Source: Guillardia theta CCMP2712 (Eukaryota > Protista > Cryptophyta). From it: DNA of 64,000 nt. The DNA is taken from assembly GCF_000315625.1 (NCBI RefSeq), contig NW_005434639.1, positions 354,613 through 418,612 of the forward strand, in the 5' to 3' direction. The position numbers and the translations under genes are program-made. Of this stretch, positions 1 to 37,093 are shown in pieces (the first letter of the stretch is position 1; the number at the start of each line of letters is the position of its first letter). The notes below the pieces were generated by a model. The model searched no databases and was not told the DNA's origin. It saw only the letters and a program-made list of their open reading frames with translations.

Positions 1-3000
1 CCGTCATCTACCAACAACACCGTGCAGTTGAAATTCCCGTTGACATTCAAGGCTGTTTGGAAGGTGAGGCTGCCGTTGGTCGGGTCGATGGAAGGCAGGC
101 GGGTGAAGGCAGCCGGCGAGCTTGAGGATACGATGAAAGTCAGCTTCTGCTGCACCTCGTCGAGAGACCCAGCAGAGATGTCATACGCAGCCCCGCCTAT
201 CGTGACCAGGCCGGCGTCCTCGAGGCGTACGAAGGTCGAGTTGATTGAGAAGGTAGGGGCCACATTCTTATCCTCTAGCACGATGCTCCGGTTTTGCTCA
301 GGGCTCTTCCCTGCGATGTTGACCGCCGTGATTGTAACGGCTAGGGTGGACTTGGGAAGGACGTCATCAAGAACGATGCTGCAGACACCCAGACAGACCG
401 TCAGGTTCTCCATCCTCTCGAAGCCGTAGTAGCTGCCGCTGGACGCTCTCGCATATCGCCCGGAGACGTTGAAATGATACTGGGCCGCTTCAAAGTCCTG
501 GCCGGGATCTTTGTATGACCACTGAATGGACACGCGATTGAGAGAGATCTGAGTAAGGACGACGTCAAAGACGCTTCGAGGTCTGCTCACGACTGCGAGC
601 TTCAAGGCCTGCTTGGTCGACACGTTGACTCCGCCGTTCATCGTCCCGCCATCGTCACGCGCAACAACAGAGAAAGTAGTCAAGCCTGTTCCTAACGACG
701 TGGCATTGAAGGATAGAGTGCCGCTCGGAGATATCGCGAGGGTGTTAAGGAGGAGGTTCTGAGGCCCGCCTAGGAAGGTGACGCTGAAGGAGATGTTCTG
801 ACTGAGATCCTCGTCAGGAGCTCCCAAGGAGATGTTGCGAAGAGCGTTGGGGACGAGGTTCGATCCGAGGTCGAGGAGGAGGAGGAGTTGGCTAGCGACG
901 ACGAAGCTCGGGGGGTCATTGACGGGACGCACCACAATGTGCAATGGAATGGGAGAGTAGTGGGTTCGGTCTCCATCCACGAGACTGATGTTCCAGAAAG
1001 CGTCTCCCGAAGCATTGCCTTCTAATTGCAGGTGAAGGCTTCCGTTTAAATCCAATGACGGCGTTACCTTGAACAAATTGTTGCTAGATTCAATCATCGC
1101 ACACTGAAAGAAGCCTTGTGAACTGACATAACTGATGTTGGTTGCAACAGAAGTAACGAAGTCAAGCTTTTTGCTATCTTCATCGGTAGTCAGGAAGGGA
1201 AGCTTCAGTACGAAGAATGTGACTGACTTCTCGGATGAAGGAATGTAGACACTCGTCGTCGAGATGTTAGTTGCCATGGGCTCCTGTGACGGCATCGCAT
1301 AAGTCGGTTCGGGTGTGGTTGAGATTACATCCGCAGCATTCGGCATGCCGGTTGCCTTTGGGGGCCATGCTGGATGAGGCAAGTCACCGAGAGTGATGAG
1401 CAACTTGCCGGCAGACGACACGTCACACTGAGGCACTTGGTTCTTGTACAAGCCATTCCAATCCTGTACCGAGTCAATGAGGTTGTTGATCCGCCAGCTG
1501 ACCAAGATGTATTGAAGCAAAGCTGTCAAGGCTTCATAGTTCTTGGAGCTCTCTAGTGCCCAGGGAAGGGAGAAGCGAGTCGACCTCAAGTCTCCGTACA
1601 AGGTGATCCATAAGGGGCCATGGAAGCCGAGGTCGACCTCGAGGCAGGACATGCGAGTCTCGTCTCCCCGCATGTCTCCATCCGACTCCACCAGTGCAGT
1701 TACAACCACAGCAGTTTTCCCTGAGACTGCCACTGACATGGCCACATCCAGCCCGGCAGTCGCAAGAGCAAATCGTTTCAAGAAGCTTGCTGGAGTGTTG
1801 TCAGGCATGTCTCGCAGGACAGCAGATGCTTTGACGTGTAGGAGGGAAGGAAATGAAGGGACGAGAAATCCGAGAGGAGCGCCTCTTCTTTCCAAGACGT
1901 CTACAGCCCCTGCATACTTCCCTCCGTTGCCCAAGCTCAAAGTGACGATGTGATCCAAGTCGACCTTGACTGGCGTGTGGGGTATAATCAGAATCGTTGT
2001 GATGGATCCATTTAACAATCTCTGTTCAGAGTTCCAGTCGTAGTCACCTCTCCCGATCAGAAGGAAGTTTTCCTCACCATCCTTTCTCAATCTGGCGGTA
2101 ACTCCATATGGTCCAGCGTTGAGACTGTACGATCCCTCTGCAGCAATTGCATACAGCTGGCGGTTGCTGATAGTCAGAAGATTTGTTACGGTCATGTTGG
2201 CATTTAACCCCTTGCCCCTCACATCATATTCAGCGATCAAGCTAAGGTCAATCAGTTCGTTTCCTAGAAGAGCGGCTCTTGAAATCAACTTCACCATTCC
2301 CCCTGGTTTGAGCATGACTAGCTCGCGGAGATCTCCACAAACATCCAGGGCAAACCAATGTCTCTCACCAATCCAAAGGCTGGCAAGAACACTTCCATGC
2401 GCATAGTCCCATCCTCGGCTCAACAAGCCTTGGATCACAAGATCAATAGAGGTCAACTTACTCTCAGCCCAGCTACTAGAAAGATGGATTTCAGACGGAA
2501 GGCAAGACCAACCAAGACAATCACCCGAAGCATTTGCAAACCCAACAAGATTATTAGATCCAATCAGAGCATTCAGTGAACTACTCCCTGCCAAACGAGC
2601 ATCCGACACCACTCCATTGAGAGACATTTCTATGTCAACCTGCCTCTTCTGGTTCCACAACGCTACCAGGCCTGGAGCCAGGTGCAGCTTCCTTTCTGTC
2701 TTGGGCTCGTCGCAGGACGGCCAGCAGCTTCCGGAGCTGCACGACAAAGAACATGCCCTGATTTGATGATAGTATGTGGAGAAGGTCAGGCCTCCGCTCG
2801 ACTCTAGGCTGCCGCCTCCTGCTAGCGGCCCGAGCCCAAGGCTTGTCGAGTAGTTGGCTGCGAGCAGCTCCTCTCTCTGCGTCACGTCATCGAATGTCGT
2901 CCCGGCCTCCGTCGACGAGCTCGAGGGCCACGGCGTGTACTGGTCGGTCTTGGTGTACTTGCCTGCTATCGACCCCGTCCAGTCGACCAGAGGCTCTGAG

Positions 3001-5786
3001 TCATAGCCCACATGGAGCACGCTTGACCCGTCCAGAGCTTCATTCAGCGTCGCCCCGTCAAGCGTCATGGTCATGTCGATCTTCTTTTTCTGGTTCCACA
3101 ACGCTACCAGGCCTGGAGCCAGGTGCAGCTTCCTTTCTGTCTTGGGCTCGTCGCAGGACGACCAGCAGCTTCCGTAGCTGCACGACGAAGAACATGCCCT
3201 GATTTGATGATAGTATGTGGAGAAGGTCAGGCCTCCGCTCGACTCTAGGCTGCCGCCTCCTGCTAGCGGCCCGAGCCCAAGGCTTGTCGAGTAGTTGGCT
3301 GCGAGCAGCTCCTCTCTCTGCGTCACGTCATCGAATGTCGTCCCGGCCTCCGTCGACGAGCTCGAGGGTATCGGCGTGTACTGGTCGGTCTTGGTGTACT
3401 TGCCTGCTATCGACCCCGTCCAGTGCAAGAGTTTGTTATTTTGGAAAAGTAAAGTGACATCTCCATTCATAGATAGCAAGTTTGCTTTCAAATTGTTGAT
3501 CAGATTTGCATCAAAGTAGATTAATTTGTGATTGTTATCCTCTACATTGAGCACTGCTCCGAAATTCCCATCTAATAGGGACATTTGTGGCCAAGATGCT
3601 CCCGCATGGATGTTCCAGTTCAGCAAGCGATGAGAATTCAATTCAAAGTTTATCTTTCCTTGCAAATCAACACTTCCTTGCCCGGGCAATATGAAACTGA
3701 GGCTCGTATCAGTTTTTAGCAGAGATCGGTTCTCCCATCGAATGTCTGCAAGAAGGAAGATTCCTTCGAATCCGTTGTTTCCAGGCTTGTTGTCTCCTAG
3801 GAAGAGGGTCACTCGGAACTTTTCTTTTCGATCTTTTCTATCTTTGGCAATAAGATTGATACTTATTTCATCATTTCGGAGTACTAACCCTCCATCAATG
3901 CTGCCGTCCAGTATCGTTGAGTCCCCGATGCTGAAGCTGACGCTAGCCAGCCCTTCGATCTTCCCCATCTCTCTGACCTCTCGTGCTAGCAAGGCAGCAT
4001 CTGCCATGTACCAATCCTGGGAGCTGGTTTGCATCTTGGAAGACAATGTCCAATTCAAAGGCAACAAGAAGAGTTGATCCACCTTGTTAAGTTGCCGCCT
4101 AGCTGCAGTATTGACCCACTCCCAATTCATGGTGCCCTGCGAGTCAACAAGTCTGACAATCGCAAACAAGATGCTTGATCCCTCTAGACTCCCCGTGCCG
4201 GTTTTACTTGCAATCCCGATGTCCACTTCCAACGAATGCTTGACGAGTACAGTGCTGCCTACCTCAACGTCCAGGGCACAAATCAGCGAGAGACTGTCGT
4301 CTAGGACATCGAGGTACGGTTGACTTTGCCCTGCATTGAATCCAATTAGTTCGTATGCCCTGACCAGGTCAATCTTTGTGAATTCGGCGACATTAGCATG
4401 ACCATATATAACCGGATCACCTTGCCCTGATAAGAAGTAACTGATGTCCGCAAAAGTTATTTCCAAGGATGGTAGTTTATGAGGATCAAAGAGAAATGAA
4501 AAATTTGGTATCTTTTGTTCTGAAATCAGATTGTTTTCCAATGAGCCACAAACCTGAAGTCTCCATCGCTGAACAAAATCAGCTTCAAAACAATTCAAAT
4601 TCTGATTCCCAACCCATCCGGATCGAGGATGCATCTTTCTATGAAAATTTGTCTGCACTGGATACAGCTTGATGAAAAATGAATTTCGGCTTCCCAACAG
4701 ATTCCGGAACAACGCTGAGCTCGAACCTGATGTCAAAAAGGTAACTGAAATCCCAGAAACAGGATGAGTGGTCAGATAGTTCGTAAAGACTTGTACAATT
4801 GGCCGGATGCTGCTGCTGTTGCATTTTCCATGAGCGCAAGTAATGAAAAAATTTGCTCGTGTTCGAGAAATCTGATCGAGATGAGTAGAGCCATTTCCCT
4901 TTTGCGAGATCAGCAGCCACTGGGTGGGTAAAGTCCCAATCCTTACAACTCCATTCGGTTGCTTTGAGCTCGATTCCTGGAACTGTGACTCGGTCCCATA
5001 AAACGCTTCGGCCCCTATATCAAAAGAGATTTCAGGGACGTGAACGTATACAGCAGAAATCAATCCACTCGAATCAAAGATTAAGGGGAGTCTGGGTTTC
5101 AAGATCAGAGCAATCTCCTCTTTAGGAACGACGAACATGCTTGCAAAATCCTTGAGATCTTCTGCTTGAAAGAGATTCAGAGCAAGGTTCAAGACAGAGG
5201 CCAAGGATTGTGAATCGGTAGATCGACGTGAAATCTTCCCCATCTCATAACTCAGGAATTTCGTGAGGTTTCTCGTCTGCGTCTTCTGATACAGACCCCA
5301 ATAGAGGTCGGCCTTCACCTCAAGGAAACATTCCACCTTGAGTCTGAGAAGCGCCCCATGCCAGGACATGAACTGCGAGAAGTCGACGTCGGTGACGTTG
5401 ACACCTCCTCGGAGCGACTGAGAGTCAGAGCTCTGACCCATGACTTGAACAGGCCCGTCGATGTTGATTTGCACAAGGTGCAGCCAATAGTAAGTTGCCG
5501 AGAGGAAAGAAACATTGCAAATCGCTGATTCAAATTGAATGTCATGCAGCATAGAAGCCTGCGAGGGGGCGGTTGCGGTTGCATTGAACACGATCGCATC
5601 TCTTTCAGAGGCGACATGCAGAACAATTCCTTGAGGATGAAGCATCATGTCTTTCTTGGGTAGGGTGAAAACGACGAAAATCGCAATGCCAGCCAAAAGA
5701 AGCAGAATCAGAGCAGCAGCTGCGAGGTACCGGTATCGACGATTCGAGACTTTCTTCATTGCCTCTTCCTCCTCAGGAGACTCCAT
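1..5786 (-). CDS. Giant intronless type-II membrane/surface protein (>1900 aa, C-terminus beyond window) with cadherin-like/Ig-like and FN3 modules
   Basis: ATG at 5786 (MESPEEEEAMKKVSNRRYRYLAAAALILLLLAGIAIFVVFTL, a signal anchor). The frame was open wherever I translated it, and the track lists no stop-terminated ORF in this frame, so it appears to run to base 1. Motifs: VVRPVNDPPSF, VVARDDGGTMNGG, NVAPTFSIN...GSLTFQTALNVNGNFNCTVLLVDD; FN3-like VSIQWS...VTITAVNIAGKS. Confidence 0.8.
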   Translation of the reverse strand, partial: MESPEEEEAMKKVSNRRYRYLAAAALILLLLAGIAIFVVFTLPKKDMMLHPQGIVLHVASERDAIVFNATATAPSQASMLHDIQFESAICNVSFLSATYYWLHLVQINIDGPVQVMGQSSDSQSLRGGVNVTDVDFSQFMSWHGALLRLKVECFLEVKADLYWGLYQKTQTRNLTKFLSYEMGKISRRSTDSQSLASVLNLALNLFQAEDLKDFASMFVVPKEEIALILKPRLPLIFDSSGLISAVYVHVPEISFDIGAEAFYGTESQFQESSSKQPNGVVRIGTLPTQWLLISQKGNGSTHLDQISRTRANFFITCAHGKCNSSSIRPIVQVFTNYLTTHPVSGISVTFLTSGSSSALFRNLLGSRNSFFIKLYPVQTNFHRKMHPRSGWVGNQNLNCFEADFVQRWRLQVCGSLENNLISEQKIPNFSFLFDPHKLPSLEITFADISYFLSGQGDPVIYGHANVAEFTKIDLVRAYELIGFNAGQSQPYLDVLDDSLSLICALDVEVGSTVLVKHSLEVDIGIASKTGTGSLEGSSILFAIVRLVDSQGTMNWEWVNTAARRQLNKVDQLFLLPLNWTLSSKMQTSSQDWYMADAALLAREVREMGKIEGLASVSFSIGDSTILDGSIDGGLVLRNDEISINLIAKDRKDRKEKFRVTLFLGDNKPGNNGFEGIFLLADIRWENRSLLKTDTSLSFILPGQGSVDLQGKINFELNSHRLLNWNIHAGASWPQMSLLDGNFGAVLNVEDNNHKLIYFDANLINNLKANLLSMNGDVTLLFQNNKLLHWTGSIAGKYTKTDQYTPIPSSSSTEAGTTFDDVTQREELLAANYSTSLGLGPLAGGGSLESSGGLTFSTYYHQIRACSSSCSYGSCWSSCDEPKTERKLHLAPGLVALWNQKKKIDMTMTLDGATLNEALDGSSVLHVGYDSEPLVDWTGSIAGKYTKTDQYTPWPSSSSTEAGTTFDDVTQREELLAANYSTSLGLGPLAGGGSLESSGGLTFSTYYHQIRACSLSCSSGSCWPSCDEPKTERKLHLAPGLVALWNQKRQVDIEMSLNGVVSDARLAGSSSLNALIGSNNLVGFANASGDCLGWSCLPSEIHLSSSWAESKLTSIDLVIQGLLSRGWDYAHGSVLASLWIGERHWFALDVCGDLRELVMLKPGGMVKLISRAALLGNELIDLSLIAEYDVRGKGLNANMTVTNLLTISNRQLYAIAAEGSYSLNAGPYGVTARLRKDGEENFLLIGRGDYDWNSEQRLLNGSITTILIIPHTPVKVDLDHIVTLSLGNGGKYAGAVDVLERRGAPLGFLVPSFPSLLHVKASAVLRDMPDNTPASFLKRFALATAGLDVAMSVAVSGKTAVVVTALVESDGDMRGDETRMSCLEVDLGFHGPLWITLYGDLRSTRFSLPWALESSKNYEALTALLQYILVSWRINNLIDSVQDWNGLYKNQVPQCDVSSAGKLLITLGDLPHPAWPPKATGMPNAADVISTTPEPTYAMPSQEPMATNISTTSVYIPSSEKSVTFFVLKLPFLTTDEDSKKLDFVTSVATNISYVSSQGFFQCAMIESSNNLFKVTPSLDLNGSLHLQLEGNASGDAFWNISLVDGDRTHYSPIPLHIVVRPVNDPPSFVVASQLLLLLDLGSNLVPNALRNISLGAPDEDLSQNISFSVTFLGGPQNLLLNTLAISPSGTLSFNATSLGTGLTTFSVVARDDGGTMNGGVNVSTKQALKLAVVSRPRSVFDVVLTQISLNRVSIQWSYKDPGQDFEAAQYHFNVSGRYARASSGSYYGFERMENLTVCLGVCSIVLDDVLPKSTLAVTITAVNIAGKSPEQNRSIVLEDKNVAPTFSINSTFVRLEDAGLVTIGGAAYDISAGSLDEVQQKLTFIVSSSSPAAFTRLPSIDPTNGSLTFQTALNVNGNFNCTVLLVDD
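2650..3422. repeat. In-frame intragenic tandem duplication, period 441 bp (147 aa)
   Basis: About 2650-2981 and 3091-3422 are near-identical; duplicated shadow ORFs start at 2774 and 3215. Confidence 0.9.
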
Positions 5787-27144: not shown

Positions 27145-29566
27145 ATGGACAAGGAAAGACAGAAGGAGCATTTGAAAGGAAGAAAGAGGAGGGAAGTGCA
27201 CGGCTCCCCATGGCACCTCGGGCAGTACATGGCGACTTGGACAGCGCCAGAAGAGAAGGAGAAGAACGAGAACGAGAAGAAGAGAAGACGCTTGTGTTCC
27301 TGCAAGAGACAGAACCGTACTTTCTTCGTCGTGATGTCGTTTGGGATTCTATTCCTCTTGACTCTCTTGCATCTCATGCTCCCGCCTTTGGGTGAGGATC
27401 GCGTCAAGCTTGTCTGGCAACCCGCGCTGGTTCTCGATCAAGAGCTTGTTTCCTTGGGGCTTACCTTCATGCCAGGACGCCTCTGTCTTGAACCGCACGA
27501 AACAAGAGTTCTTGGTCTTCAAGGAGAACCAGTCTCTCCCGACTTTCGGGATAACAGGAGGAAGGTATGACAAGAAGACAGGAAAGAAGTCAGATTGCAA
27601 TACCCGACTGGTCAAGTTCTGTAATGGCATGTGTAGCAAGCATGGTTCTTCCCCACCTGAGGTCTGCTTGTGCCGACACACTGGGTCAGGCTGTTGACAA
27701 CCACCGCGCAGGAGCTCAAGTCTCCTGGCCTGCTCCAGCTCCGCGGAAATCTTTCCGAAGACTCGCAGTGCTTCCTGTGGTATACAAACGCGATATGGAC
27801 GAGGCCGACGGCTGGCAGAGCAGGGTTGATGTTGTCACGTCTAGGTATCACAATCCTTCCCTTCCGCCTCCTCCGCTCCCCCTCCTCCGCGTTCCCTTGT
27901 TCTTCGTTTCCATATCATGTAACTGCGTCGCTGCAGGTGCAGGCGTGGACAACAAGGCTTACTTTGCTCAAGCTGTGTCCGAGTACGTGGAGAGGAATGG
28001 CTGCAAGTACTTCCAGGTGAAAAACTGCTTGCTTGAACTCTGCTTACTCGCCGTAGTTCACACCTCCTACCCTCGACCTTGGCGAGCAGCATGGATGCTT
28101 TGCCTTCTTTTACAACAATGCGAGATATGCCACATCTCCCCAGGCCCTCTGGTTCCTAAAGAAGTCAAAGGGTTCGACTGGGTAACGACATTCCTTCCTT
28201 CCTCTACCTCTCCTCCACCACGCCTGCTCCCTTGGCAGCTGATTTGTAGATCAGGAGACATGTGCGGCTGATCACTCGCGAGGAAGTGGAGCAAATTGCA
28301 GCGAAGCAACAGGACATGTAAAGCAACGCCACCTCCAAGTTCCCTCTGCTCATCTCCTTTCCCTATTTCATGTCCTCCCTCTCATCCTGGCTTGCTCAGT
28401 CTCTTCCTTCCTCCCCGCTGTGCTGCCATCCACCTCTGGCTTACGCTTGATCAGGTGCCCACGCAGCGGAGGGCTGGCAAGCTTGGAGGTGCCGGACATG
28501 TGGACGATAAAGGGCCACAAGTTCGATCATCGCATCTACGTGCTCGTTCCGTCCATGGAGCCCTGGACCATCTTCTTCCGACCGGGTCACCTTCGCTTCT
28601 CAGTCTTCAATCACACCAACGCCACTCGCACCCGCGCCAAGAAGCTCGTGTTCCTCAACGACTCCGACAACTCGGCGGCGGAGACCGACCCCTACCTCGC
28701 CACTCACGTCACCAACCCTCGATTTGGCCTCGCCCACACCAACAAGTCCCAGGAAGTCCTTCGGCCTGTCGAGACGCTCCGCTCGGCCCTCGAGGAGGAG
28801 CTTGGGGTCACTCGCGGGCGGCAGGCGTGGAGGAAGCTGAGCCTGAGCGTGAGAAATGCGGCACTGAGCGCCATCTTCTCTGTGAGGTACCGCAGCTGGG
28901 GGCAGAATTCCCCCTGGGGCTACCTCTTCATGGCCATGGACGTAGCCTACGACAGGCACCAGAACGCGTTCGTGCTGGACCTCAACTCAGGCCCCTCCTT
29001 CTACCACGGCAGCGAGTGGCCCGAATGGTATGTGCAAGACAGAAGCGCCATGATCCGAGAGGCAGCAGACATCATCCAAGAGCTCGCTTTCCGCAAGCTG
29101 GTCTCGCAGCAGGAGACCAGCTTAAACCCCCTGAACCTCACAGCCATGCCGCTCAAGACCGCCAAGAGCTGGGAGATGCTGTTTGCGGAAGGGGGAGGAT
29201 GGCGACATGAGGGGAGGGATGGGCTGATCAAGGAGGGAGGATGCGTCAGCCTCAGTTACCAAGACGCTCAGCCGCGTCAGCGCCAGAAGCAAGTCGAAGA
29301 ATTGAAGGTGAGAAGCCTACCAGCTGAGATCCTGTGCTCAAGTTTCTGCAGAAATTGAAGACAGAGATGTTTCTTCGAATTCAATCGACAATGGAAAGCG
29401 AAGACGAGGACGAGGCGGCTGCCATGATTCGTGCGTATCTTTATTTCCTCCCTCCGTCTCTTTCTGCCCTCATCCCCTACTTTAACATTGACATCCCTCA
29501 GGTTCGATCCATCGCATCCTCCACGCGCGCGAGCAGCTCAATTCCACGGCTGCTTCACCCCTTTAA
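27145..29566 (+). CDS. Tubulin-tyrosine-ligase-like (ATP-grasp) protein with N-terminal transmembrane anchor
   Basis: TM segment TFFVVMSFGILFLLTLLHLML. TTL motifs GHKFDHRIYVLVPSMEP, GHLRFS, HVTN, YLFMAMDVAYD...FVLDLNSGPSF. Last exons inferred: ...AMIR|SIHRILHAREQLNSTAASPL*. Confidence 0.7.
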
Positions 29567-30745
29567 GAAACCTGTGTACCCCTGCGCGTTGAGGGTCTGC
29601 GGATCCAAGTCAGATGTCAGAGATGTTATTGAAGCAAGTCCCTCCTCCTCACCTGGAACACTACTCCCGTGAAGATGCCTCCTGCGAACATGGCCGGCAC
29701 TGCGATGACCGACTTGGTCACCAGCAGCGCCATCCCTGACAGCCCGTGCCCGCTAGTGCATCCCGAAGCAAGACGGCTCCCAAAGATGCTCAGGAAGCCG
29801 CCAATGAACGCCTGCACGACGGGCACGCCATGTGCGAGCCCTCGGGTGTTGGTGAAGGTGGAGGAGAGAAAGGCGCCGGAGATGGCGCTGAGGAGGTACG
29901 TTGCCTGCCACCAGTTGTCCAGACCCATGCGGTATCCGTTCCAATGCACGAGCTTCTGCTGGAGGTACCCCGAGAGACCGAGAGGCTGCGACGTCAGCGT
30001 CATGTATGCCTGCGATGATCCCAGCGTGTCGGCGACCATGAAGACTGCAGGGAGCTGTAAGGATCCGATGATCACACCCATCAGGTGAGGAGGAAGAGTG
30101 TTGATCCATGGCTTCGCCCACGACGGCAGCTCTGATGAGCTTGTCCAAGGAAAGTAGATCTCCACGAGGTAGATTACTCCAAACAGAAAAGCAGCAAGAG
30201 AAGAAGCCAAGCGAGCATAGGAAACGTTGATCTGACTCATGACCGTCTGCTCTTCAATCTTCTCCTTTGACTTGGTGCAGTACAGCGGGATCAGCCGAGG
30301 CTGCAAGATGCCGTATAAGGCAGCAGCCGTCATGCCCCCTGCGAGGGTCCACAAGGAGTTGGGAACACCTGAACCAACCTGGACCAGCACCATCCCAGGA
30401 CAGGAGCCAGAGAGCGCCATGCCTGATCCGAGAGTGAACGCCCCAAGAGAGACTGCGGCCACTGTCTTTGCTGCCAGCGGCTTCATGAAAATCTCTTGTA
30501 CGTGCTGAAAGCGCTTCGGAGAAAGCTTAGATGCGATCGTCAAGAACAGCGCCGAGCTGGCAGCCGCGCCCAAGAACATCTTCAACTGTGAGCAAGAGCT
30601 TCAGAATGACCCCAGCCAAACAAGCAAATCTCGCTCGTCTTACCATCAAGAACCTCCGGAAGAGGAACTGCTCACGAATCACCAGGGGCAGGGTAACCTT
30701 CCCCAGATCCATGGCGGCACCGAAGCAGAGACCCATCACGCAGGA
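29419..30745. repeat. Left arm of about 1.33-kb near-perfect inverted repeat
   Basis: Reverse complement of 34210-35540 with only a few substitutions and one small indel. Confidence 0.95.
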
Positions 30746-30775
30746 GGAGGCAAGAGTGACAACTGATTTCCACAT
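29555..30775 (-). CDS. YeeE/YedE (TsuA-like) sulfur-compound/thiosulfate transporter, stand-alone copy
   Basis: MGLCFGAAMDLGKV...FLM|LKMFL, GMALSGSCPG, FGSRLASGCTSGHGLSGM; multiple TM helices; two short introns. Confidence 0.85.
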
Positions 30776-32219
30776 CTTGAAACAGAAAGGATGTCAAACC
30801 ATAAAAGCGCAACGGGGATGACAACTCTGAAGGCAACGAAAAGTTAAGATTGCTTGCAAGCAGATGCGAAGTTGTCAGTGCGAGGCATGTGGGTTGCCAA
30901 GTTCAAGTTGTCAGGTATCAGCGATCAGCTCAACACATCATGTCGATGAAGACAGGATGACATGAGGCAAACATTCATCGTCTACAGCAGAAATTCGTCT
31001 AAAGTCGGACATGCTCGCAAGTTTCGCCTTCACACAACACGATCTATGCCTGTGAGGCGCAGCGGAGCTTTTGTAGCCTGTGGGATAACCAAAGGGTGGG
31101 GTAGTTTATGATAAAAGTGGGGGTGGGGTAGTCGAAAACTTGGTTGGGTCCATGACAGGACATGACTCCTCAACTCCCCTCGTAAGCTACCACTGAGTAT
31201 CCTTCTAAAGTTACCACTGAATATCCTCATAAATTACCACCTAGGAACCACATAAGTTACCATTTGCTGGAAGTTCACGCTCTACAGTAAAACTAGGTCG
31301 TCGAATAACACTACCTGAATGTGCACCAGTACTAAATCAGAAGAAGTGCCGGTAATGATATTGTACCCATTCCCGGTTTCAGTACAAATGATAATTTCAG
31401 TTTGTACCCGAGACTTTCTAACAAACAAAAAGATAAAAATCATTGTTGTGTTCAAAATAGATACATTTTAATAACTCATTCTACATGATCGTGGCGAGCC
31501 ATGACCTTCCTTTCCATCCATGGAAATTCCTTCCCTTTCATCTCATAATTCCAAATATGGGAAGAGATATTGAATTAACTTTCAAAATTGAGTCAGCATT
31601 TGGTCGCTGACTTGTCACGTACCTTTCTTTTTTTCGCTACGACCACCCTTTACGACCACCGGTTTGTACCACCCTACCCACCGAAAGACCAACCATGAGA
31701 TCACCCTCTACCCTGCTTTCTACATATGACTACCCACCCTTTTCAGCTTCTCAAACCACCATTCAGACACTCTCCACCCGCCACCAATCAGTACCCCCCA
31801 CCACCCTCATTGAGGTGGGATGGACCCCTTGCTCGTCCTTTACAAATATTGCAGTCCTCTGCTTCAGCCACAACGAAAAGAATTTCCTCTCCCTTTCTGC
31901 CGCCCTTCAACCCCTCTGAATCAGGTCAAGTTTTGATTCTCCTCCTTCTTTGCCTACACCTCCAAGTTCTTGTATACCCTACTTTCTGTATCTGCTTTTG
32001 TATTGCTCCCTCACATTTGTCTGCTGCAGTGAATTCTTTCTGCCATTTCAGTGTGTATGTCTCAAATATATTCAAACCTTTTTGCTCACTCGACATTCCA
32101 CAACAAAGCCTGAGTACTTTTCAACCTTACTTCCACCTTGTAGAGTTGATCTCTTTCACCTTTCTTGAAGCTGTCTTTGTCCGATGATTGCTGACTGTCC
32201 TCGAACAGCTAAATACAAG

Positions 32220-35200
32220 ATGGAGACACCGATGACTTCTGTGTGTATGTCTCTTGCGGAGGGTGTAGAGCAAGAAGCTATGAACAACAATGGTAGAATC
32301 ATTCGTGTCGACGAGAACCTCTACATCTCCAACTCGCTCAAACCAGGAATGCTGTCTTCTATCAAAGACCTGGGCGTCAAGACTGTCATCAACATCCAGT
32401 TTGAAAGTGAAGGAGACTTCAACAGCCTTAAGGAAGATTTGACTCGCCTTGCTATTGAGTATCACAATGATCCACTGGATTTCGAGATGAATGCGGAAGA
32501 TGAGCTCGACCAAGTGCTCTCGCTCTTGGATAAGAGTCAAAAGCCTTGCCTTGTCTTCTGTGAGGCTGGTATCAGAGCAGCTGCAGTTGGTGTTGCATTC
32601 TCAGCTACTCGTAAGAAAGGAGCAGAAGTACTTGGCAAGCTAGAGGCTTATGAAGAGCATGATATCCTAGGACCCACCTATTCTGGGTTGTTAGAAGAAT
32701 TCACGAAGGCGGGATCAAGTTCCAAGTTGAAAACTTTGGTCGCAGGTTACACTGCGTCTAAGCTTTCCAACTGTGCAAAACGTCCAGGGCATTCCAAGAT
32801 CTCTGAAGACCTATACATCACTGGACAGCTAACCGAAGAAGAGCTCAAAGACTTCGCAAAGAAAGGCGTCAAGTCTATCCTGAACATGCGACCAGTCGAA
32901 GAGGCAGGACAGCTGGGCCTGGGAGTACTTGCAAGAGAAGAAGAGGTTGTTTTGCCAAATTTGTAGCCAGATGATGTAACGAATATGTATTGCAGATTGT
33001 GAAATCGCTTGGGTTGAAGTATGTAAATCTGCCTGTCCCAAGGAATGGTCCATACAGTCTGGAACTATGTGAACAAGTTTCTGAAACTCTCACGGACCTT
33101 CTCAAGACGTCAAAGCCAGTGGTAGTACACTGTAGAACAGGGAGACGCGCCGAAGAAATCATGAAGCAAGCCGCTGATGCTGGGCTGATGGAAAATCCTT
33201 TCACTCAAATTTGTTGGAGGGTAGGCAAGGACATTGAGCACAGTGTGCATGAGAGAACCCGCATCGTTCGAGTTGATGAGAATGTGTACATCGCGGGTCA
33301 AATACATGCAGATTCGTTACAGAACATCAAAGATCTCGGAGTGAAGTCAGTTATCAATCTGAGAGATAAATCAGAGCTCGGTTTCGAAGATCTATCATTC
33401 GAGCTCAGCAAGATTGGTGTTGAATGCATTAATGATCCTCTGGATTACGATATGCGGGCCGATACTGACATGGATCAAGTTTTGTCAGTTCTTGACAAAT
33501 GCAAAAAACCATGTTTGGTGTTTTGTCAAGTTGGACTCAGAGCAGCTGCAGTTGGTGTTGCATTCGCAACGACTAGAAAGAAAGGAGCAGAAGCTGTAAA
33601 AGGAACTGTGGACCTGACAAACATTCTCGAGACTACTTACATGAACCTTTTGGACGAGCTAGACGAATCACATCCAGGCACGACTATCAAAAGCTTCGTC
33701 GCAGGTTACATTGCGTCTAAGCTTTCCAACTGTGCAAAACGTCCAGAAAATACAAAGATCTCTGAAGACCTATACATCACTGGACAGCTAACCGAAGAAG
33801 AGCTCAAAGACTTCGCAAAGAAAGGCGTCAAGTCTATCCTGAACATGCGAGGTCCTGCAGAGGCAGGACAGCTGGGCCTGGGAGTACTTGCAAGAGAAGA
33901 AGAGGTTGTTTTGCCAAATTTGTAGCCAGATGATGTAACGAATATGTATTGCAGATTGTGAAATCGCTTGGGTTGAAGTATGTAAATCTGCCTGTCCCGA
34001 GAGAAGGACCTTATTCTGACGAGCTATGCGCCCGGGTCAAGGACACCTTGAATGAACTCTTAAACACAGCCAAGCCAGTGGTAGTACACTGTAGAACCGG
34101 AAGGAGGGCTGAAACGATTATCAAACAAGCTGATCCTCATTTCTTGGAGGAGCATACAGAATCGAAAGTTGAGTCCAATATGTCGAAATCGGCAAGAACC
34201 CTTTCTTCATCCTGCGTGATGGGTCTCTGCTTCGGTGCCGCCATGGATCTGGGGAAGGTTACCCTGCCCCTGGTGATTCGTGAGCAGTTCCTCTTCCGGA
34301 GGTTCTTGATGGTAAGACGAGCGAGATTTGCTTGTTTGGCTGGGGTCATTCTGAAGCTCTTGCTCACAGTTGAAGATGTTCTTGGGCGCGGCTGCCAGCT
34401 CGGCGCTGTTCTTGACGATCGCATCTAAGCTTTCTCCGAAGCGCTTTCAGCACGTACAAGAGATTTTCATGAAGCCGCTGGCAGCAAAGACAGTGGCCGC
34501 AGTCTCTCTTGGGGCGTTCACTCTCGGATCAGGCATGGCGCTCTCTGGCTCCTGTCCTGGGATGGTGCTGGTCCAGGTTGGTTCAGGTGTTCCCAACTCC
34601 TTGTGGACCCTCGCAGGGGGCATGACGGCTGCTGCCTTATACGGCATCTTGCAGCCTCGGCTGATCCCGCTGTACTGCACCAAGTCAAAGGAGAAGATTG
34701 AAGAGCAGACGGTCATGAGTCAGATCAACGTTCCCTATGCTCGCTTGGCTTCTTCTCTTGCTGCTTTTCTGTTTGGAGTAATCTGTCTCGTGGAGATCTA
34801 CTTTCCTTGGACAAGCTCATCAGAGCTGCCGTCGTGGGCGAAGCCATGGATCAACACTCTTCCTCCTCACCTGATGGGTGTGATCATCGGATCCTTACAG
34901 CTCCCTGCAGTCTTCATGGTCGCCGACACGCTGGGATCATCGCAGGCATACATGACGCTGACGTCGCAGCCTCTCGGTCTCTCGGGGTACCTCCAGCAGA
35001 AGCTCGTGCATTGGAACGGATACCGCATGGGTCTGGACAACTGGTGGCAGGCAACGTACCTCCTCAGCGCCATCTCCGGCGCCTTTCTCTCCTCCACCTT
35101 CACCAACACCCGAGGGCTCGCACTTGGCGTGCCCGTCGTGCAGGCGTTCATTGGCGGCTTCCTGAGCATCTTTGGGAGCCGTCTTGCTTCGGGATGCACT

Positions 35201-35400
35201 AGCGGGCACGGGCTGTCAGGGATGGCGCTGCTGGTGACCAAGTCGGTCATCGCAGTGCCGGCCATGTTCGCAGGAGGCATCTTCACGGGAGTAGTGTTCC
35301 AGGTGAGGAGGAGGGACTTGCTTCAATAACATCTCTGACATCTGACTTGGATCCGCAGACCCTCAACGCGCAGGGGTACACAGGTTTCTTAAAGGGATGA
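32220..35400 (+). CDS. Fusion protein: four DUF442/TIGR01244-type sulfurtransferase (phosphatase-fold) domains plus YeeE/YedE transporter
   Basis: Four domains with a GVK(T/S)(V/I)(I/L)N motif and CX4R loops (FCEAGIR, HCRTGRR, FCQVGLR, HCRTGRR). Phase-0 introns at 32946-32995, 33905-33954, 34312-34369 and about 35303-35358. ORF 33949-34428 reads from domain 4 straight into the YeeE N-terminus with no stop. Confidence 0.8.
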
Positions 35401-35540
35401 AGCAGCCGTGGAATTGAGCTGCTCGCGCGCGTGGAGGATGCGATGGATCGAACCTGAGGGATGTCAATGTTAAAGTAGGGGATGAGGGCAGAAAGGGACG
35501 GAGGGAGGAATGAAATAAAGATACGCACGAATCATGGCAG
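34210..35540. repeat. Right arm of about 1.33-kb inverted repeat
   Basis: Reverse complement of 29419-30745. Confidence 0.95.
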
Positions 35541-35910: not shown

Positions 35911-37093
35911 TCAGGGCATGGGCATCTCACAGGCAGAGGGATAGCAGCCGAACGCGGAATGAAACAGCTGTCGCTCGATGTCGGTCAGGAGGGTGCTGGC
36001 CCCAAGCCTCAAGAGCGAGGGATCCAACCACTCATCTCCCAGCGTCTCCTTAATCAGCACAAGATATTGCAGCGCCTGCTTTGCTGTTCGGATGCCTCCG
36101 GCCGGCTTGAACCCAACGCGGATGCCCGAGCGTTGGTAGTGATCTCTGATGGCCCTGCACATGACGAGGCTAACTTCGAGGTTCGCGTTCTCCTTCTCCT
36201 TCCCCGTCGAAGTCTTGATGAAGTCAGCACCAGCCTCCATGCAGACCATGCTCGCCTTGTAGATCCTCGTCAACTCGCCCAGCTCTCCCGTCGCTAAGAT
36301 GGTTTTCATATGTGCGTGACCGCATGCCTTCCGGAAGTCCTGCAGCTCTCGCAAGAGCTGATCCCATTCGCCAGCCAACGCGAGCTTGCGAGGGATCACG
36401 ATGTCGATCTCGCTAGCGCCATCAGCCACTGCCTGACGGATCTCTTCCAGCTTGTGCTCGTGCTTGATCTGGCCCGCAGGGAACCCGGTGGCGACGGCTG
36501 CGATAGGGATGGCAGAGTCTCCGATGAAGTGCTTGCAGTCGCTGACCCGGTCAGGATAGACGCAGACAGCTCCCACCTTGAAAAAATTCAACCCACAGGT
36601 CGCTGAGGAAGCGAACATGACCCTCTGCCCTTCCCTTCTCATCCTCCACTTCCGTTCATCTCCTTCTTTTTCTACCCTCCTTCTTGGCTCTCCCCTCATC
36701 ACATCACTCGCTCCCTTCTGCTCTCCTTCGCTACCCTATCCCTCTATCCTCTCTAAGCAATTTTCCTCTCATTGTTGCATCTCCCTCCTTCTGCTCCTTC
36801 TCTTCTCCATGCTTCCTTGATTATCCTATCCTGCCTGTCTCATGTTTTCTTCGCCTTACCTGTATCTTCAGGTCTTCGAACCCCAGGGCTTTCAGAATGT
36901 CCTTCCTGATTGGCTCCTTTGCTTTAGCGCAGAGTCGGGCGATGGTGCCGGGGGTGTCGTCGCCGGCGAGGGTGGTGAGGTCAAGGCAGGAGACAGCACG
37001 GAGGAGCCATGGAACCTGAGCGTCTCCTCTCACGCTCCGTCGCGTCATCATCGTCCTCGCCTCCCTCCGCACTCCTCCTGTGTTGACAGCCAT
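35911..37093 (-). CDS. DERA: Deoxyribose-phosphate aldolase (long, human-like form)
   Basis: MAVNTGGVRREARTMMTRRSVRGDAQVPWLLRAVSCLDLTTLAGDDT, AVCVYP, AAVATGFPAGQ, GASEIDIVI, AHMKTILATGEL, GADFIKTSTGKE, VGFKPAGGIRTAK, RLGASTLL. One intron at about 36580-36859. Confidence 0.93.

What the first reader, a model, noticed from the sequence alone, without database searches (positions are those of the whole stretch)
32220..35400. Eukaryotic (DUF442)4-YeeE fusion: candidate one-polypeptide thiosulfate/sulfane-sulfur uptake and processing system
Seen: four tandem domains, each with an intact CX4R cysteine loop and a GVKxxxN motif, read in frame through 50-58-nt introns into a complete YeeE/YedE transporter with both Cys motifs (GSCPG, GCTSGH). 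Known: bacterial TsuA/YeeE imports thiosulfate and needs a separate soluble Cys sulfurtransferase (TsuB/YeeD). DUF442 domains act as sulfurtransferases when fused to SQR or persulfide dioxygenase (Blh), and bacterial sulfide-oxidation clusters often include YeeE/YedE genes. Inference: the sulfur acceptor has been tethered, four times over, to the transporter in an alga. I know of no described eukaryotic protein with this architecture. The DUF442 part looks more AT-rich than the YeeE part, hinting at a separate origin.
Basis: partly seen in the sequence, partly recalled or inferred. Interest (0 to 1): 0.9.

Follow-up and report, generated by a model that had tools for sequence, protein, structure and literature searches.

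The report
Alga's sulfur channel with built-in sulfurtransferases
The alga Guillardia theta has one expressed gene that joins four small sulfur-transfer enzyme domains to a membrane sulfur channel. Bacteria keep these same parts as neighbouring genes, so the fusion gives a testable clue to what the unstudied eukaryotic versions of this channel do.

Summary
Window 32220-35400 (+) is a five-exon, all phase-0 gene of Guillardia theta CCMP2712. It encodes two A-B pairs of DUF442 domains, each with an intact CX4R loop, fused in frame to a 9-helix YeeE/YedE domain (988 codons).

RNA contigs and transcript-derived database proteins cross the DUF442-to-YeeE junction. NCBI's genome annotation wrongly splits the gene. 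The same fusion occurs in a close relative and in a more distant, unidentified eukaryote, so it is old and conserved.

The channel is not a TsuA orthologue. Its pore motifs match the bacterial half-size YedE1E2/PmpAB type, which in Pseudomonadota lies directly beside a DUF442 gene. Charge bias predicts a membrane orientation opposite to E. coli TsuA, with the N-terminus in the cytosol.

Best reading (about 0.5): a reduced-sulfur importer with tethered cytosolic persulfide acceptors. Export is not excluded.

A 99% identical inverted stand-alone YeeE copy lies 3.4 kb upstream; this scan's note s1-453511 had already flagged it.

No paper describes the fusion, though UniProt holds collapsed two-domain transcript versions. 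I rate it a new variant of a known kind, of moderate to good interest.

The parts
32220..32945 (+). Exon 1 (242 codons): start METPMTS, DUF442 domain A (about 32295-32600, CX4R CEAGIR at 32559-32576), a linker, and the N-terminal half of domain B (from about 32796).
   Evidence: Transcript proteins P0254 and P0255, and the Hanusia phi fragment P0010, start with the same METPMTS.
32946..32995 (+). Intron 1 (50 nt, GT..AG, phase 0), inside domain B.
   Evidence: A spliced joint 32943/32994 is seen in run X7. Homologous cDNA-derived proteins read straight across the junction, LAREEE|IVK.
32996..33904 (+). Exon 2 (303 codons): C-terminal half of B (CRTGRR at 33131-33148), domain A' (CQVGLR at 33524-33541), and the N-terminal half of B'.
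   Evidence: RNA contig 33010-33741 in X1 and X7. P0260.
33905..33954 (+). Intron 2 (50 nt), identical to intron 1.
   Evidence: X1 record 1 joins 33712-33902 to sequence identical to 33953-33998.
33955..34311 (+). Exon 3 (119 codons): C-terminal half of B' (CRTGRR at 34090-34107), a short tether, the internal Met at 34180, and the first transmembrane helix and loop A of the YeeE domain.
   Evidence: RNA contigs 33969-34239 (X1, depth 337) and 33969-34310 (X7) cross position 34180.
34312..34369 (+). Intron 3 (58 nt).
   Evidence: Spliced out in X1 and X7.
34370..35302 (+). Exon 4 (311 codons): the bulk of the YeeE/YedE domain, with GSCPG at 34547-34561 (loop B) and GCTSGH at 35192-35209 (loop D).
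   Evidence: PF04143 at E 7e-30. Aligns with StYeeE C91 and C293. AlphaFold2 pLDDT is about 95, and Foldseek gives 6LEO and 6LEP at TM 0.75-0.77.
35303..35358 (+). Intron 4 (56 nt).
   Evidence: Spliced out in X1 and X7, and in 8 raw RNA reads of X22.
35359..35400 (+). Exon 5 (13 codons plus TGA). A poly(A) loose end is seen at about 35534.
29440..30779 (-). Inverted near-identical copy: the stand-alone YeeE gene GUITHDRAFT_152718 (ATG at 30775, stop at 29555, 368 aa, MWKSVV...). It is head-to-head with the fusion gene.
   Evidence: 1340 nt, 99% identical. P0163 = EKX45438. Its own 5' end appears as X1 record 5 at depth 39.6. The two arms differ at 12 sites in 34179-34209 and at only 8 sites in the remaining 1306 nt.
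34176..35515 (+). The arm of the inverted repeat that lies inside the fusion gene. Identity becomes sharp from 34210.

Best explanation
This is one gene for one polypeptide. An array of four cytosolic DUF442 (rhodanese-type, CX4R) sulfurtransferase domains is fused to the N-terminus of a nine-helix YeeE/YedE-type sulfur channel. The channel sits with its N-terminus and its GCTSGH loop towards the cytosol and its CPG loop towards the far side.

Proposed mechanism: reduced sulfur (zero-valent or sulfane sulfur, or thiosulfate) crosses the membrane along the two conserved pore cysteines. At the cytosolic mouth it is taken over as a persulfide by the CX4R cysteines, first by B', which sits about a dozen residues from helix 1. 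It is then passed to glutathione or other acceptors. This makes the protein a eukaryotic, fused version of the bacterial yedE1-yedE2-DUF442 cassette.

Shown here: the gene structure, its expression, conservation of the fusion, the folds, the motifs, the charge bias and the bacterial gene neighbourhood. Inferred: substrate, direction of transport, sulfur transfer between the domains, and which membrane holds the protein.
For: Fusion is real:
- The frame is continuous, with no stop before 34180.
- RNA contigs cross the junction at the same depth as the DUF442 exons (337 against 353-378), while the stand-alone copy's 5' end has depth 39.6.
- Transcript-derived proteins P0254 and P0255 (MMETSP/UniProt) and P0260 (JGI) carry DUF442 plus YeeE.

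Fusion is conserved:
- P0262 has B-A'-B'-YeeE in a close relative.
- P0263 (spliced) and L013 (genomic, with introns and eukaryotic neighbours) have (A-B)1-YeeE at 54% identity.
- The fused YeeE domains group together, apart from the other G. theta paralogues.

Domain identity:
- PF04273 scores 52 bits against a cut-off of 26.1.
- TIGR01244 gives E 2e-21.
- 2F46 and 3GXH are the best PTP-fold matches.
- The YeeE fold matches 6LEO at TM 0.75.

Orientation:
- In 105 of 105 eukaryotic homologues, the simple loops on the N-terminal side carry more K+R (6.9 against 2.2).
- The control, E. coli TsuA, shows the reverse (1 against 14 in simple loops; 3 against 24 overall), which fits its solved N-out topology (PMC7449682).
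- There is no signal peptide before 650 soluble residues.

Bacterial precedent:
- In 24 of 56 DUF442-bearing Pseudomonadota genomes, DUF442 lies within 5 kb of a DUF6691 half-YeeE gene.
- Three loci inspected show the cassette GCTSGH-half, then CPG-half, then DUF442.
- The charge bias of those halves matches the eukaryotic orientation.
- The bacterial GCTSGH half is 33% identical to the C-terminal half of the G. theta YeeE, E 3e-11.

Biochemistry from papers:
- YedE1E2 imports zero-valent sulfur and yields GSSH, and yedE1E2 lies upstream of blh in Agrobacterium (PMC10812762).
- DUF442 transfers sulfane sulfur between thiosulfate, polysulfide, GSH and sulfite (PMC5823870, PMC9163753).
Against: - No transport or enzyme assay exists for any eukaryotic member.
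- Direction cannot be read from sequence.
- Seawater holds 28 mM sulfate, so the benefit of importing reduced sulfur is not obvious (my own knowledge).
- No single RNA contig covers all four domains. Assemblies collapse the repeat to two domains (P0254, P0255).
- Read laying listed no contig over 32220-32750 in the RNA runs.
- The Met at the junction is conserved, so a YeeE-only product from an internal start is not excluded.
- TIGR01244 stays below its cut-off for the G. theta protein (76.4 against 85.85), and other PTP-like Pfam families score about as well as PF04273.
- In the distant relative the linker is about 110 residues, so tight docking of B' is not a conserved feature.
- The orientation rests on the positive-inside rule, not on experiment.
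Confidence: 0.5

Rival explanations
1. Same fused protein, opposite direction. The cytosolic DUF442 domains make thiosulfate (GSSH plus sulfite) or gather sulfane sulfur, and feed it into the channel for export from the cytosol, either out of the cell or into a compartment. This would be a detoxification device.
For: DUF442 catalyses GSSH + sulfite -> thiosulfate (PMC9163753). The domains sit on the face that in TsuA is the substrate-entry face, the loop-D cysteine (PMC7449682). Many animal homologues come from sulfide-exposed invertebrates such as Ridgeia, Paralvinella and Solemya. An inside-negative membrane potential favours anion efflux (my own knowledge).
Against: Every family member characterised so far is an importer: TsuA, SoxT and YedE1E2. 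YedE1E2 did not help export (PMC10812762, PMC11582611). The bacterial halves share the eukaryotic orientation by charge bias and still import.
Confidence: 0.2
2. The domains are regulatory or phosphatase-like, not sulfur carriers. In this reading the PTP-fold array senses persulfidation or redox state, or dephosphorylates something, and gates or scaffolds the channel.
For: Several PTP-like Pfam families score as well as PF04273 (Tc-R-P 53.5 bits against 52). TIGR01244 is below its cut-off. The A-type loop (CEAGIR, CQVGLR) differs from the canonical CRSGxR.
Against: All four loops have the CX4R length typical of DUF442 (2F46 alignment), not CX5R. The Proteomonas A-B orthologue passes TIGR01244 at 90.8 bits. 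The bacterial operon link between DUF442 and half-YeeE genes points to a shared sulfur pathway.
Confidence: 0.1
3. The substrate is selenium rather than sulfur. The channel would import a reduced selenium species, and the rhodanese-like domains would carry it as a perselenide.
For: YedE-type relatives are linked to selenium transport (cited in PMC11582611). There are weak matches to selenium YedE models (E 3e-5 and 1e-4).
Against: Those matches lie far below their cut-offs (23 against 350 bits) and are weaker than the TsuA match. The bacterial partners of DUF442 are sulfide-oxidation genes (PMC9163753, PMC10812762).
Confidence: 0.07
4. Two functional units despite the open frame. YeeE would be made mainly from an internal start at 34180, as in the stand-alone copy and in NCBI's model, and the fused RNA would be read-through or an assembly effect of the 99% repeat.
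For: The repeat boundary lies at the internal Met. NCBI models split the locus. Contigs cannot phase the 1.3-kb repeat.
Against: The junction 33969-34239 is unique to this copy and is covered by RNA at full depth. There is no stop codon and no intergenic space. Two other organisms keep the fusion, one of them seen in both spliced RNA and genomic DNA.
Confidence: 0.08

Closest known systems
Bacterial yedE1-yedE2(PmpAB)-DUF442 gene cassette, and YedE1E2 beside Blh (DUF442-persulfide dioxygenase)
   Same: The same two protein kinds are linked. The pore motifs agree (GSGCTSGHG and xCPG). The predicted orientation of each half agrees. DUF442 is cytoplasmic. Sources; PMC10812762.
   Different: In bacteria there are three separate genes: two four-helix halves and one DUF442. 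Here the halves are fused in the order CPG-half, extra helix, GCTSGH-half, and two or four DUF442 domains are attached at the N-terminus of one eukaryotic, intron-bearing gene.
TsuA/YeeE with TsuB/YeeD, including natural YeeE-YeeD fusions (Corynebacterium; PDB 6LEO, 8J4C, 8K1R)
   Same: Both have a nine-helix YeeE fold with cysteines in loops B and D, and a cysteine-bearing soluble sulfur acceptor on the cytoplasmic side (PMC7449682, PMC11073785).
   Different: The acceptor there is a TusA-like fold fused at the C-terminus. Here it is a PTP-fold DUF442 at the N-terminus. The charge bias predicts the opposite membrane orientation. The TsuA model scores 41 against a cut-off of 400. There is no C22 equivalent.
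DUF442 fused to SQR or to persulfide dioxygenase (Cupriavidus SQR, Blh)
   Same: DUF442 is tethered to a partner that handles sulfane sulfur (PMC9163753, PMC5823870). Open frames of this kind were seen, at about 440 and 530-606 aa.
   Different: The partner here is a membrane channel, not an enzyme, and the domain is present four times.
Stand-alone A-B di-DUF442 proteins of other cryptophytes (Proteomonas sulcata P0008/P0261, Rhodomonas salina P0009)
   Same: They have the same A-B pair, with the same loops and the same junction sequence.
   Different: They are soluble and lack a YeeE domain.

Membership tests
YeeE/YedE (Pfam PF04143 Sulf_transp) | Profile match above the gathering score over the whole domain | tested here: met
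   Exon 4 alone scores 105 bits. Spliced P0260 scores 119.9 bits over profile positions 2-309 of 310, against a cut-off of 27.
YeeE/YedE (Pfam PF04143 Sulf_transp) | Nine transmembrane helices plus four re-entrant loops, as in 6LEO | tested here: met
   The AlphaFold2 model has pLDDT of about 95 in this part, with the matching helix pattern. Foldseek gives 6LEO and 6LEP at TM 0.75-0.77.
YeeE/YedE (Pfam PF04143 Sulf_transp) | Conserved cysteines in loop B and loop D (StYeeE C91 and C293) | tested here: met
   GSCPG aligns to GGCASG, and GCTSGH aligns to GGCNIGH. Both cysteines are at least 90% conserved across 117 sequences.
TsuA thiosulfate transporter (NCBIfam NF052577, equivalog) | Score above the equivalog cut-off | tested here: not met
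   The score is 34.7-41.3 bits against a cut-off of 400.
TsuA thiosulfate transporter (NCBIfam NF052577, equivalog) | N-out, C-in orientation with the acceptor at the loop A/B face | tested here: not met
   The charge bias is reversed relative to E. coli TsuA, and there is a long N-terminal soluble part without a signal peptide. This is a prediction, not an experiment.
TsuA thiosulfate transporter (NCBIfam NF052577, equivalog) | Third conserved cysteine in loop A (C22/C25) | tested here: not met
   Loop A reads MDLGKVTLPLVIREQF and holds no cysteine.
TsuA thiosulfate transporter (NCBIfam NF052577, equivalog) | Transports thiosulfate | not testable with these tools
   This needs an uptake or complementation assay.
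YedE1E2 / PmpAB-type sulfur transporter | GCTSGH-type and CPG-type cysteine loops | tested here: met
   The motifs are the same as in the bacterial halves of L030 and L035-L037. The C-terminal half is 33% identical, E 3e-11. The CPG half matches only weakly.
YedE1E2 / PmpAB-type sulfur transporter | Two separate four-helix polypeptides | tested here: not met
   Here there is one chain with a linking seventh helix.
DUF442 (Pfam PF04273 / TIGR01244 sulfur transferase) | Profile match above the cut-off | tested here: inconclusive
   PF04273 scores 52 bits against 26.1 on P0260, so it is met. TIGR01244 scores 76.4 against 85.85 and is not met for G. theta, but it is met (90.8) for the Proteomonas A-B orthologue. 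Tc-R-P scores equally well.
DUF442 (Pfam PF04273 / TIGR01244 sulfur transferase) | CX4R active-site loop, one residue shorter than the CX5R loop of PTPs | tested here: met
   All four domains have it. A' aligns to the CRTGTR loop of 2F46 without a gap.
DUF442 (Pfam PF04273 / TIGR01244 sulfur transferase) | Fold like the solved DUF442 proteins | tested here: met
   2F46 and 3GXH are the best PTP-fold matches. The domain pLDDT is only 60-90.
DUF442 (Pfam PF04273 / TIGR01244 sulfur transferase) | Sulfurtransferase activity | not testable with these tools
   This activity is known for Blh and for Cupriavidus DUF442 (PMC5823870, PMC9163753), not for these domains.

The most novel reading that the evidence does not exclude
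The whole eukaryotic YeeE-like family, found in cryptophytes, choanoflagellates and many marine invertebrates, is inserted in the membrane the opposite way round from bacterial TsuA. The cryptophyte fusion would then act as a Rosetta stone. It would show that these proteins import sulfane sulfur or thiosulfate and need a cytosolic rhodanese-type acceptor. If so, this would be the first reduced-sulfur uptake system described in eukaryotes.
Probability: 0.3. Interest if true: 0.75.

Novelty: new variant of a known kind. Interest (0 to 1): 0.55.

Why it matters
YeeE-like proteins are widespread in eukaryotes, including nine loci in this alga and many marine animals. I found no functional study of any eukaryotic member in the papers searched.

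A conserved fusion to sulfurtransferase domains mirrors a bacterial operon. It therefore names a likely partner chemistry and a likely orientation, and it offers a single construct that can be tested for uptake against export of thiosulfate or zero-valent sulfur.

The analysis also corrects the reference annotation. NCBI models this one gene as several models, two of which were retrieved here. Finally, it shows that the family contains members with opposite predicted membrane orientation.

Tried and rejected
- Complex prediction (B domain against YeeE domain) was not folded.
- The look-up of encoding contigs for P0163 found no record.
- Read laying listed no RNA contig on 32220-32750. I do not read this as silence. 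The word share of 0.88 fits a full mRNA (about 0.90 expected, against about 0.73 without exon 1). MMETSP transcripts also contain exon 1.
- The 150 closest YeeE cluster representatives showed no DUF442 in the 9 longest hits and the top hit scanned. The fusions appeared only after a long query became available.
- A bacterial single-chain DUF442-DUF6691 protein is suggested by an ESM Atlas cluster: 285 aa, 412 members, both Pfam families in all members. I could not confirm it at sequence level. In 251 and 401 Pseudomonadota genomes I found only adjacent genes.
- My first reading was that an N-terminal fusion to an N-out channel must mean export. I dropped it as the leading model after the charge-bias analysis with E. 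coli TsuA as control.
- G. theta shows no clear Blh-type gene.
Spliced sequences used were database proteins. The only pooling of exons was for GC counts in a script.
Full report
**What is there.** The window comes from Guillardia theta CCMP2712. The neighbouring stand-alone YeeE gene equals NCBI EKX45438 / GUITHDRAFT_152718. Earlier scan notes name the same alga.

On the + strand, 32220-35400 reads as five exons separated by GT..AG introns of 50, 50, 58 and 56 nt, all in phase 0. The product has 242 + 303 + 119 + 311 + 13 = 988 codons. Exons were searched one by one by reference. Whole spliced sequences were taken only from database proteins that the tools returned.

**Domains.** The soluble part is two A-B pairs, not four equal repeats.
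- A (32295 onward) and A' (33260 onward) are 51% identical.
- Each B domain is split by one of the two identical 50-nt introns.
- A 300-nt stretch covering the N-terminal half of B, the intron and the next 34 nt is 95% identical between the two units.
- All four domains keep a CX4R loop and a GVKxxxN motif.
- On the spliced protein P0260, PF04273 scores 52 bits (cut-off 26.1). TIGR01244 'sulfur transferase' gives E 2e-21 but stays under its cut-off (76.4 against 85.85).
- The best solved relatives by sequence and by fold are the DUF442 proteins 2F46 and 3GXH. The A' loop aligns to CRTGTR of 2F46 without a gap.

The membrane part matches PF04143 over positions 2-309 of 310. In an AlphaFold2 model built on 117 sequences it folds with pLDDT of about 95, and it matches StYeeE 6LEO/6LEP at TM 0.75-0.77. 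GSCPG and GCTSGH align with the essential C91 and C293 of StYeeE. The non-essential C22 has no counterpart.

**Is the fusion real?** There is no stop codon and no spacer before the internal Met at 34180.
- Runs X1 and X7 hold spliced contigs, with introns 3 and 4 removed, so they are RNA.
- X1 has a contig 33969-34239 and X7 a contig 33969-34310^34369-35299^35356-35540. Both run straight over 34180.
- In X1 the junction contig has depth 337, like the DUF442 exons (353-378). The separate 5' end of the stand-alone copy (ATGTGGAAATCAG...) has depth 39.6.
- Splicing of introns 1 and 2 is seen in X7 and X1. It is also confirmed by cDNA-derived homologues that read LAREEE|IVK without a break.
- The 90% cluster of the YeeE protein contains MMETSP transcripts of 685 aa: P0254 and P0255, which are UniRef100_A0A7S4P502 and A0A7S4P4X6. 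They start at METPMTS and run through DUF442 into YeeE.
- JGI proteins of 766 and 767 aa (P0260, P0262) carry B(C-half)-A'-B'-YeeE.

The 685-aa forms lack exactly one 303-codon unit, but they are collapsed at two different points inside the repeat. I therefore take them as assembly collapses. The copy-specific C-terminal half of B links exon 1 (in P0254) to A' (in P0260), which implies the four-domain mRNA. No single contig shows it.

NCBI's annotation splits the locus. Two of its models were retrieved here: a 102-aa partial (EKX45440, B' only) and a 347-aa YeeE (EKX45441).

**Conservation.**
- P0262 is a close relative's version of the fusion. Its junction reads ...DDALMWKSTATLSSSC.
- P0263 (719 aa, spliced) and the metagenome contig L013 (the same gene with introns, next to Patched-like genes) carry a single A-B pair, a linker of about 110 residues, and YeeE. 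They are 54% identical to the G. theta protein.
- In a maximum-likelihood tree, the G. theta fused copy, its stand-alone twin and P0262 form a 100% clade. This clade is sister, with weak support (82/54), to the clade holding P0263. Both lie apart from the other G. theta paralogues.
- Free A-B proteins exist in Proteomonas and Rhodomonas.

The fusion is therefore old. All G. theta YeeE paralogues are GC3-rich (0.62-0.80), and this YeeE lies in a homogenised repeat.

**The inverted twin.** 29440-30779 (-) is 99% identical to 34176-35515. It is a stand-alone 368-aa YeeE. The two copies differ at 12 sites in the first 30 nt after the ATG and at only 8 sites in the next 1306 nt. That is a sharp edge, typical of gene conversion or of a recent partial copy. 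The stand-alone MWKS start matches the relative's fused junction, so the twin most likely derives from the fused gene. Because of this repeat, contigs cannot phase the YeeE variants with the DUF442 part.

**What it is related to.** The TsuA equivalog model scores only 41 bits (cut-off 400). StYeeE gives 13.7 bits by sequence. The bacterial half-size proteins fit better. A GCTSGH-type half from a Halieaceae genome is 33% identical to the C-terminal half, E 3e-11, with the same GSGCTSGHG motif. The other half carries xCPG, as the G. theta protein does.

I sampled 251 Pseudomonadota genomes, and 56 have DUF442. In 24 of these, a DUF442 gene lies within 5 kb of a DUF6691 half-YeeE gene, and in about 15 it is directly adjacent on the same strand. 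This is my own cross-tabulation of the tables. Three loci that I read show the cassette GCTSGH-half, CPG-half, DUF442.

Published work supports the link:
- YedE1E2 imports zero-valent sulfur and yields GSSH, and in Agrobacterium it sits upstream of blh, a DUF442-dioxygenase (PMC10812762).
- DUF442 is a rhodanese-type transferase acting on thiosulfate, polysulfide, GSH and sulfite (PMC5823870, PMC9163753).

The cryptophyte gene is thus a fused form of a bacterial gene neighbourhood.

**Orientation.** StYeeE has its N-terminus outside and its C-terminus inside. YeeD binds the cytoplasmic face, and natural YeeE-YeeD fusions are C-terminal (PMC7449682, PMC11073785). Here about 650 soluble residues without a signal peptide precede helix 1, so the N-terminus must stay in the cytosol.

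The positive-inside rule agrees:
- In 105 eukaryotic homologues, the loops on the N-terminal side hold 11.2 K+R against 5.0 on the other side. In simple loops the figures are 6.9 against 2.2, with the N-terminal side higher in 105 of 105.
- The same count on E. coli TsuA gives 3 against 24, the reverse, as expected from its structure.
- The bacterial halves show the eukaryotic pattern: the CPG half is N-in, and the GCTSGH loops are on the K/R-rich side.

So the eukaryotic family is predicted to be flipped relative to TsuA and to share its orientation with YedE1E2. This places the GCTSGH loop and the DUF442 array on the same, cytosolic side. In G. theta the last DUF442 helix ends about a dozen residues before helix 1. 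The distant relative has a long linker instead.

**Mechanism.** My best reading, at about 0.5, is import of reduced sulfur through the cysteine-lined pore, followed by hand-over to the CX4R cysteines as persulfide and then to glutathione. Export of thiosulfate or sulfane sulfur made at the DUF442 domains is the main rival, at about 0.2. A regulatory or phosphatase role, a selenium substrate, and a mainly unfused YeeE are less likely. Substrate, direction, membrane location and inter-domain transfer are inferences only.

**Novelty.** Full-text searches found no paper that links DUF442 to YeeE in a eukaryote, or that links Guillardia to either one. The protein is catalogued only as unreviewed, collapsed transcript translations and as split genome models. 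It is a new variant of a known kind, not a new kind.

Noticed in passing
window 29440-30779 (-) and 34176-35515 (+): A 1340-nt inverted repeat, 99% identical, makes a head-to-head pair of the fused gene and a stand-alone YeeE gene. Identity starts sharply about 30 nt after the two ATGs. Four of the eight later differences change amino acids (P/S, C/Y, L/H).
   Followed up: partly
window 32788-32795 and 33747-33754: In runs X7 (RNA) and X15 (DNA), both labelled organism B, the two copy-specific 8-nt blocks of the B and B' N-terminal halves appear swapped relative to the window. This could be a strain difference, gene conversion, or a mis-assignment in the assembly.
   Followed up: no
G000 contigs C106, C124, C297, C18, C35 (loci L001-L010): G. 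theta has nine YeeE-like loci. They include a three-copy cluster on C297 and two copies with the same internal deletion (L008, L009). The seven outside this window are intron-free, in six-frame view, over the YeeE domain.
   Followed up: partly
alignment A2 (105 eukaryotic YeeE-like proteins) against L038:6468-7526 (E. coli tsuA): The whole eukaryotic family shows a positive-charge bias opposite to that of E. coli TsuA. This predicts a flipped membrane orientation.
   Followed up: yes
window 32220-35400, NCBI models EKX45440 and EKX45441: The reference annotation splits this gene. The two models retrieved are a 102-aa partial (B' only) and a 347-aa YeeE that starts at MDLGKV. Exon 1, A' and the junction lie outside both.
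   Followed up: yes
window 35911-36702 (-): An ORF with a deoxyribose-phosphate aldolase-like sequence (…GADFIKTSTGK…) lies tail-to-tail just downstream. The X1 RNA contig that covers the YeeE part runs on past 35600 towards it.
   Followed up: no
L013 (ENA ERZ1764451 contig, 8460 nt), gene at 349-3309: An unidentified GC-rich eukaryote carries the one-pair version (A-B)-linker-YeeE, with introns, next to Patched/sterol-sensing genes.
   Followed up: partly
P0012 (JGI, 433 aa): A Blh-like protein (DUF442 plus persulfide-dioxygenase-type metallo-beta-lactamase). Its DUF442 domain resembles the cryptophyte B domain. Its source organism is unknown.
   Followed up: no
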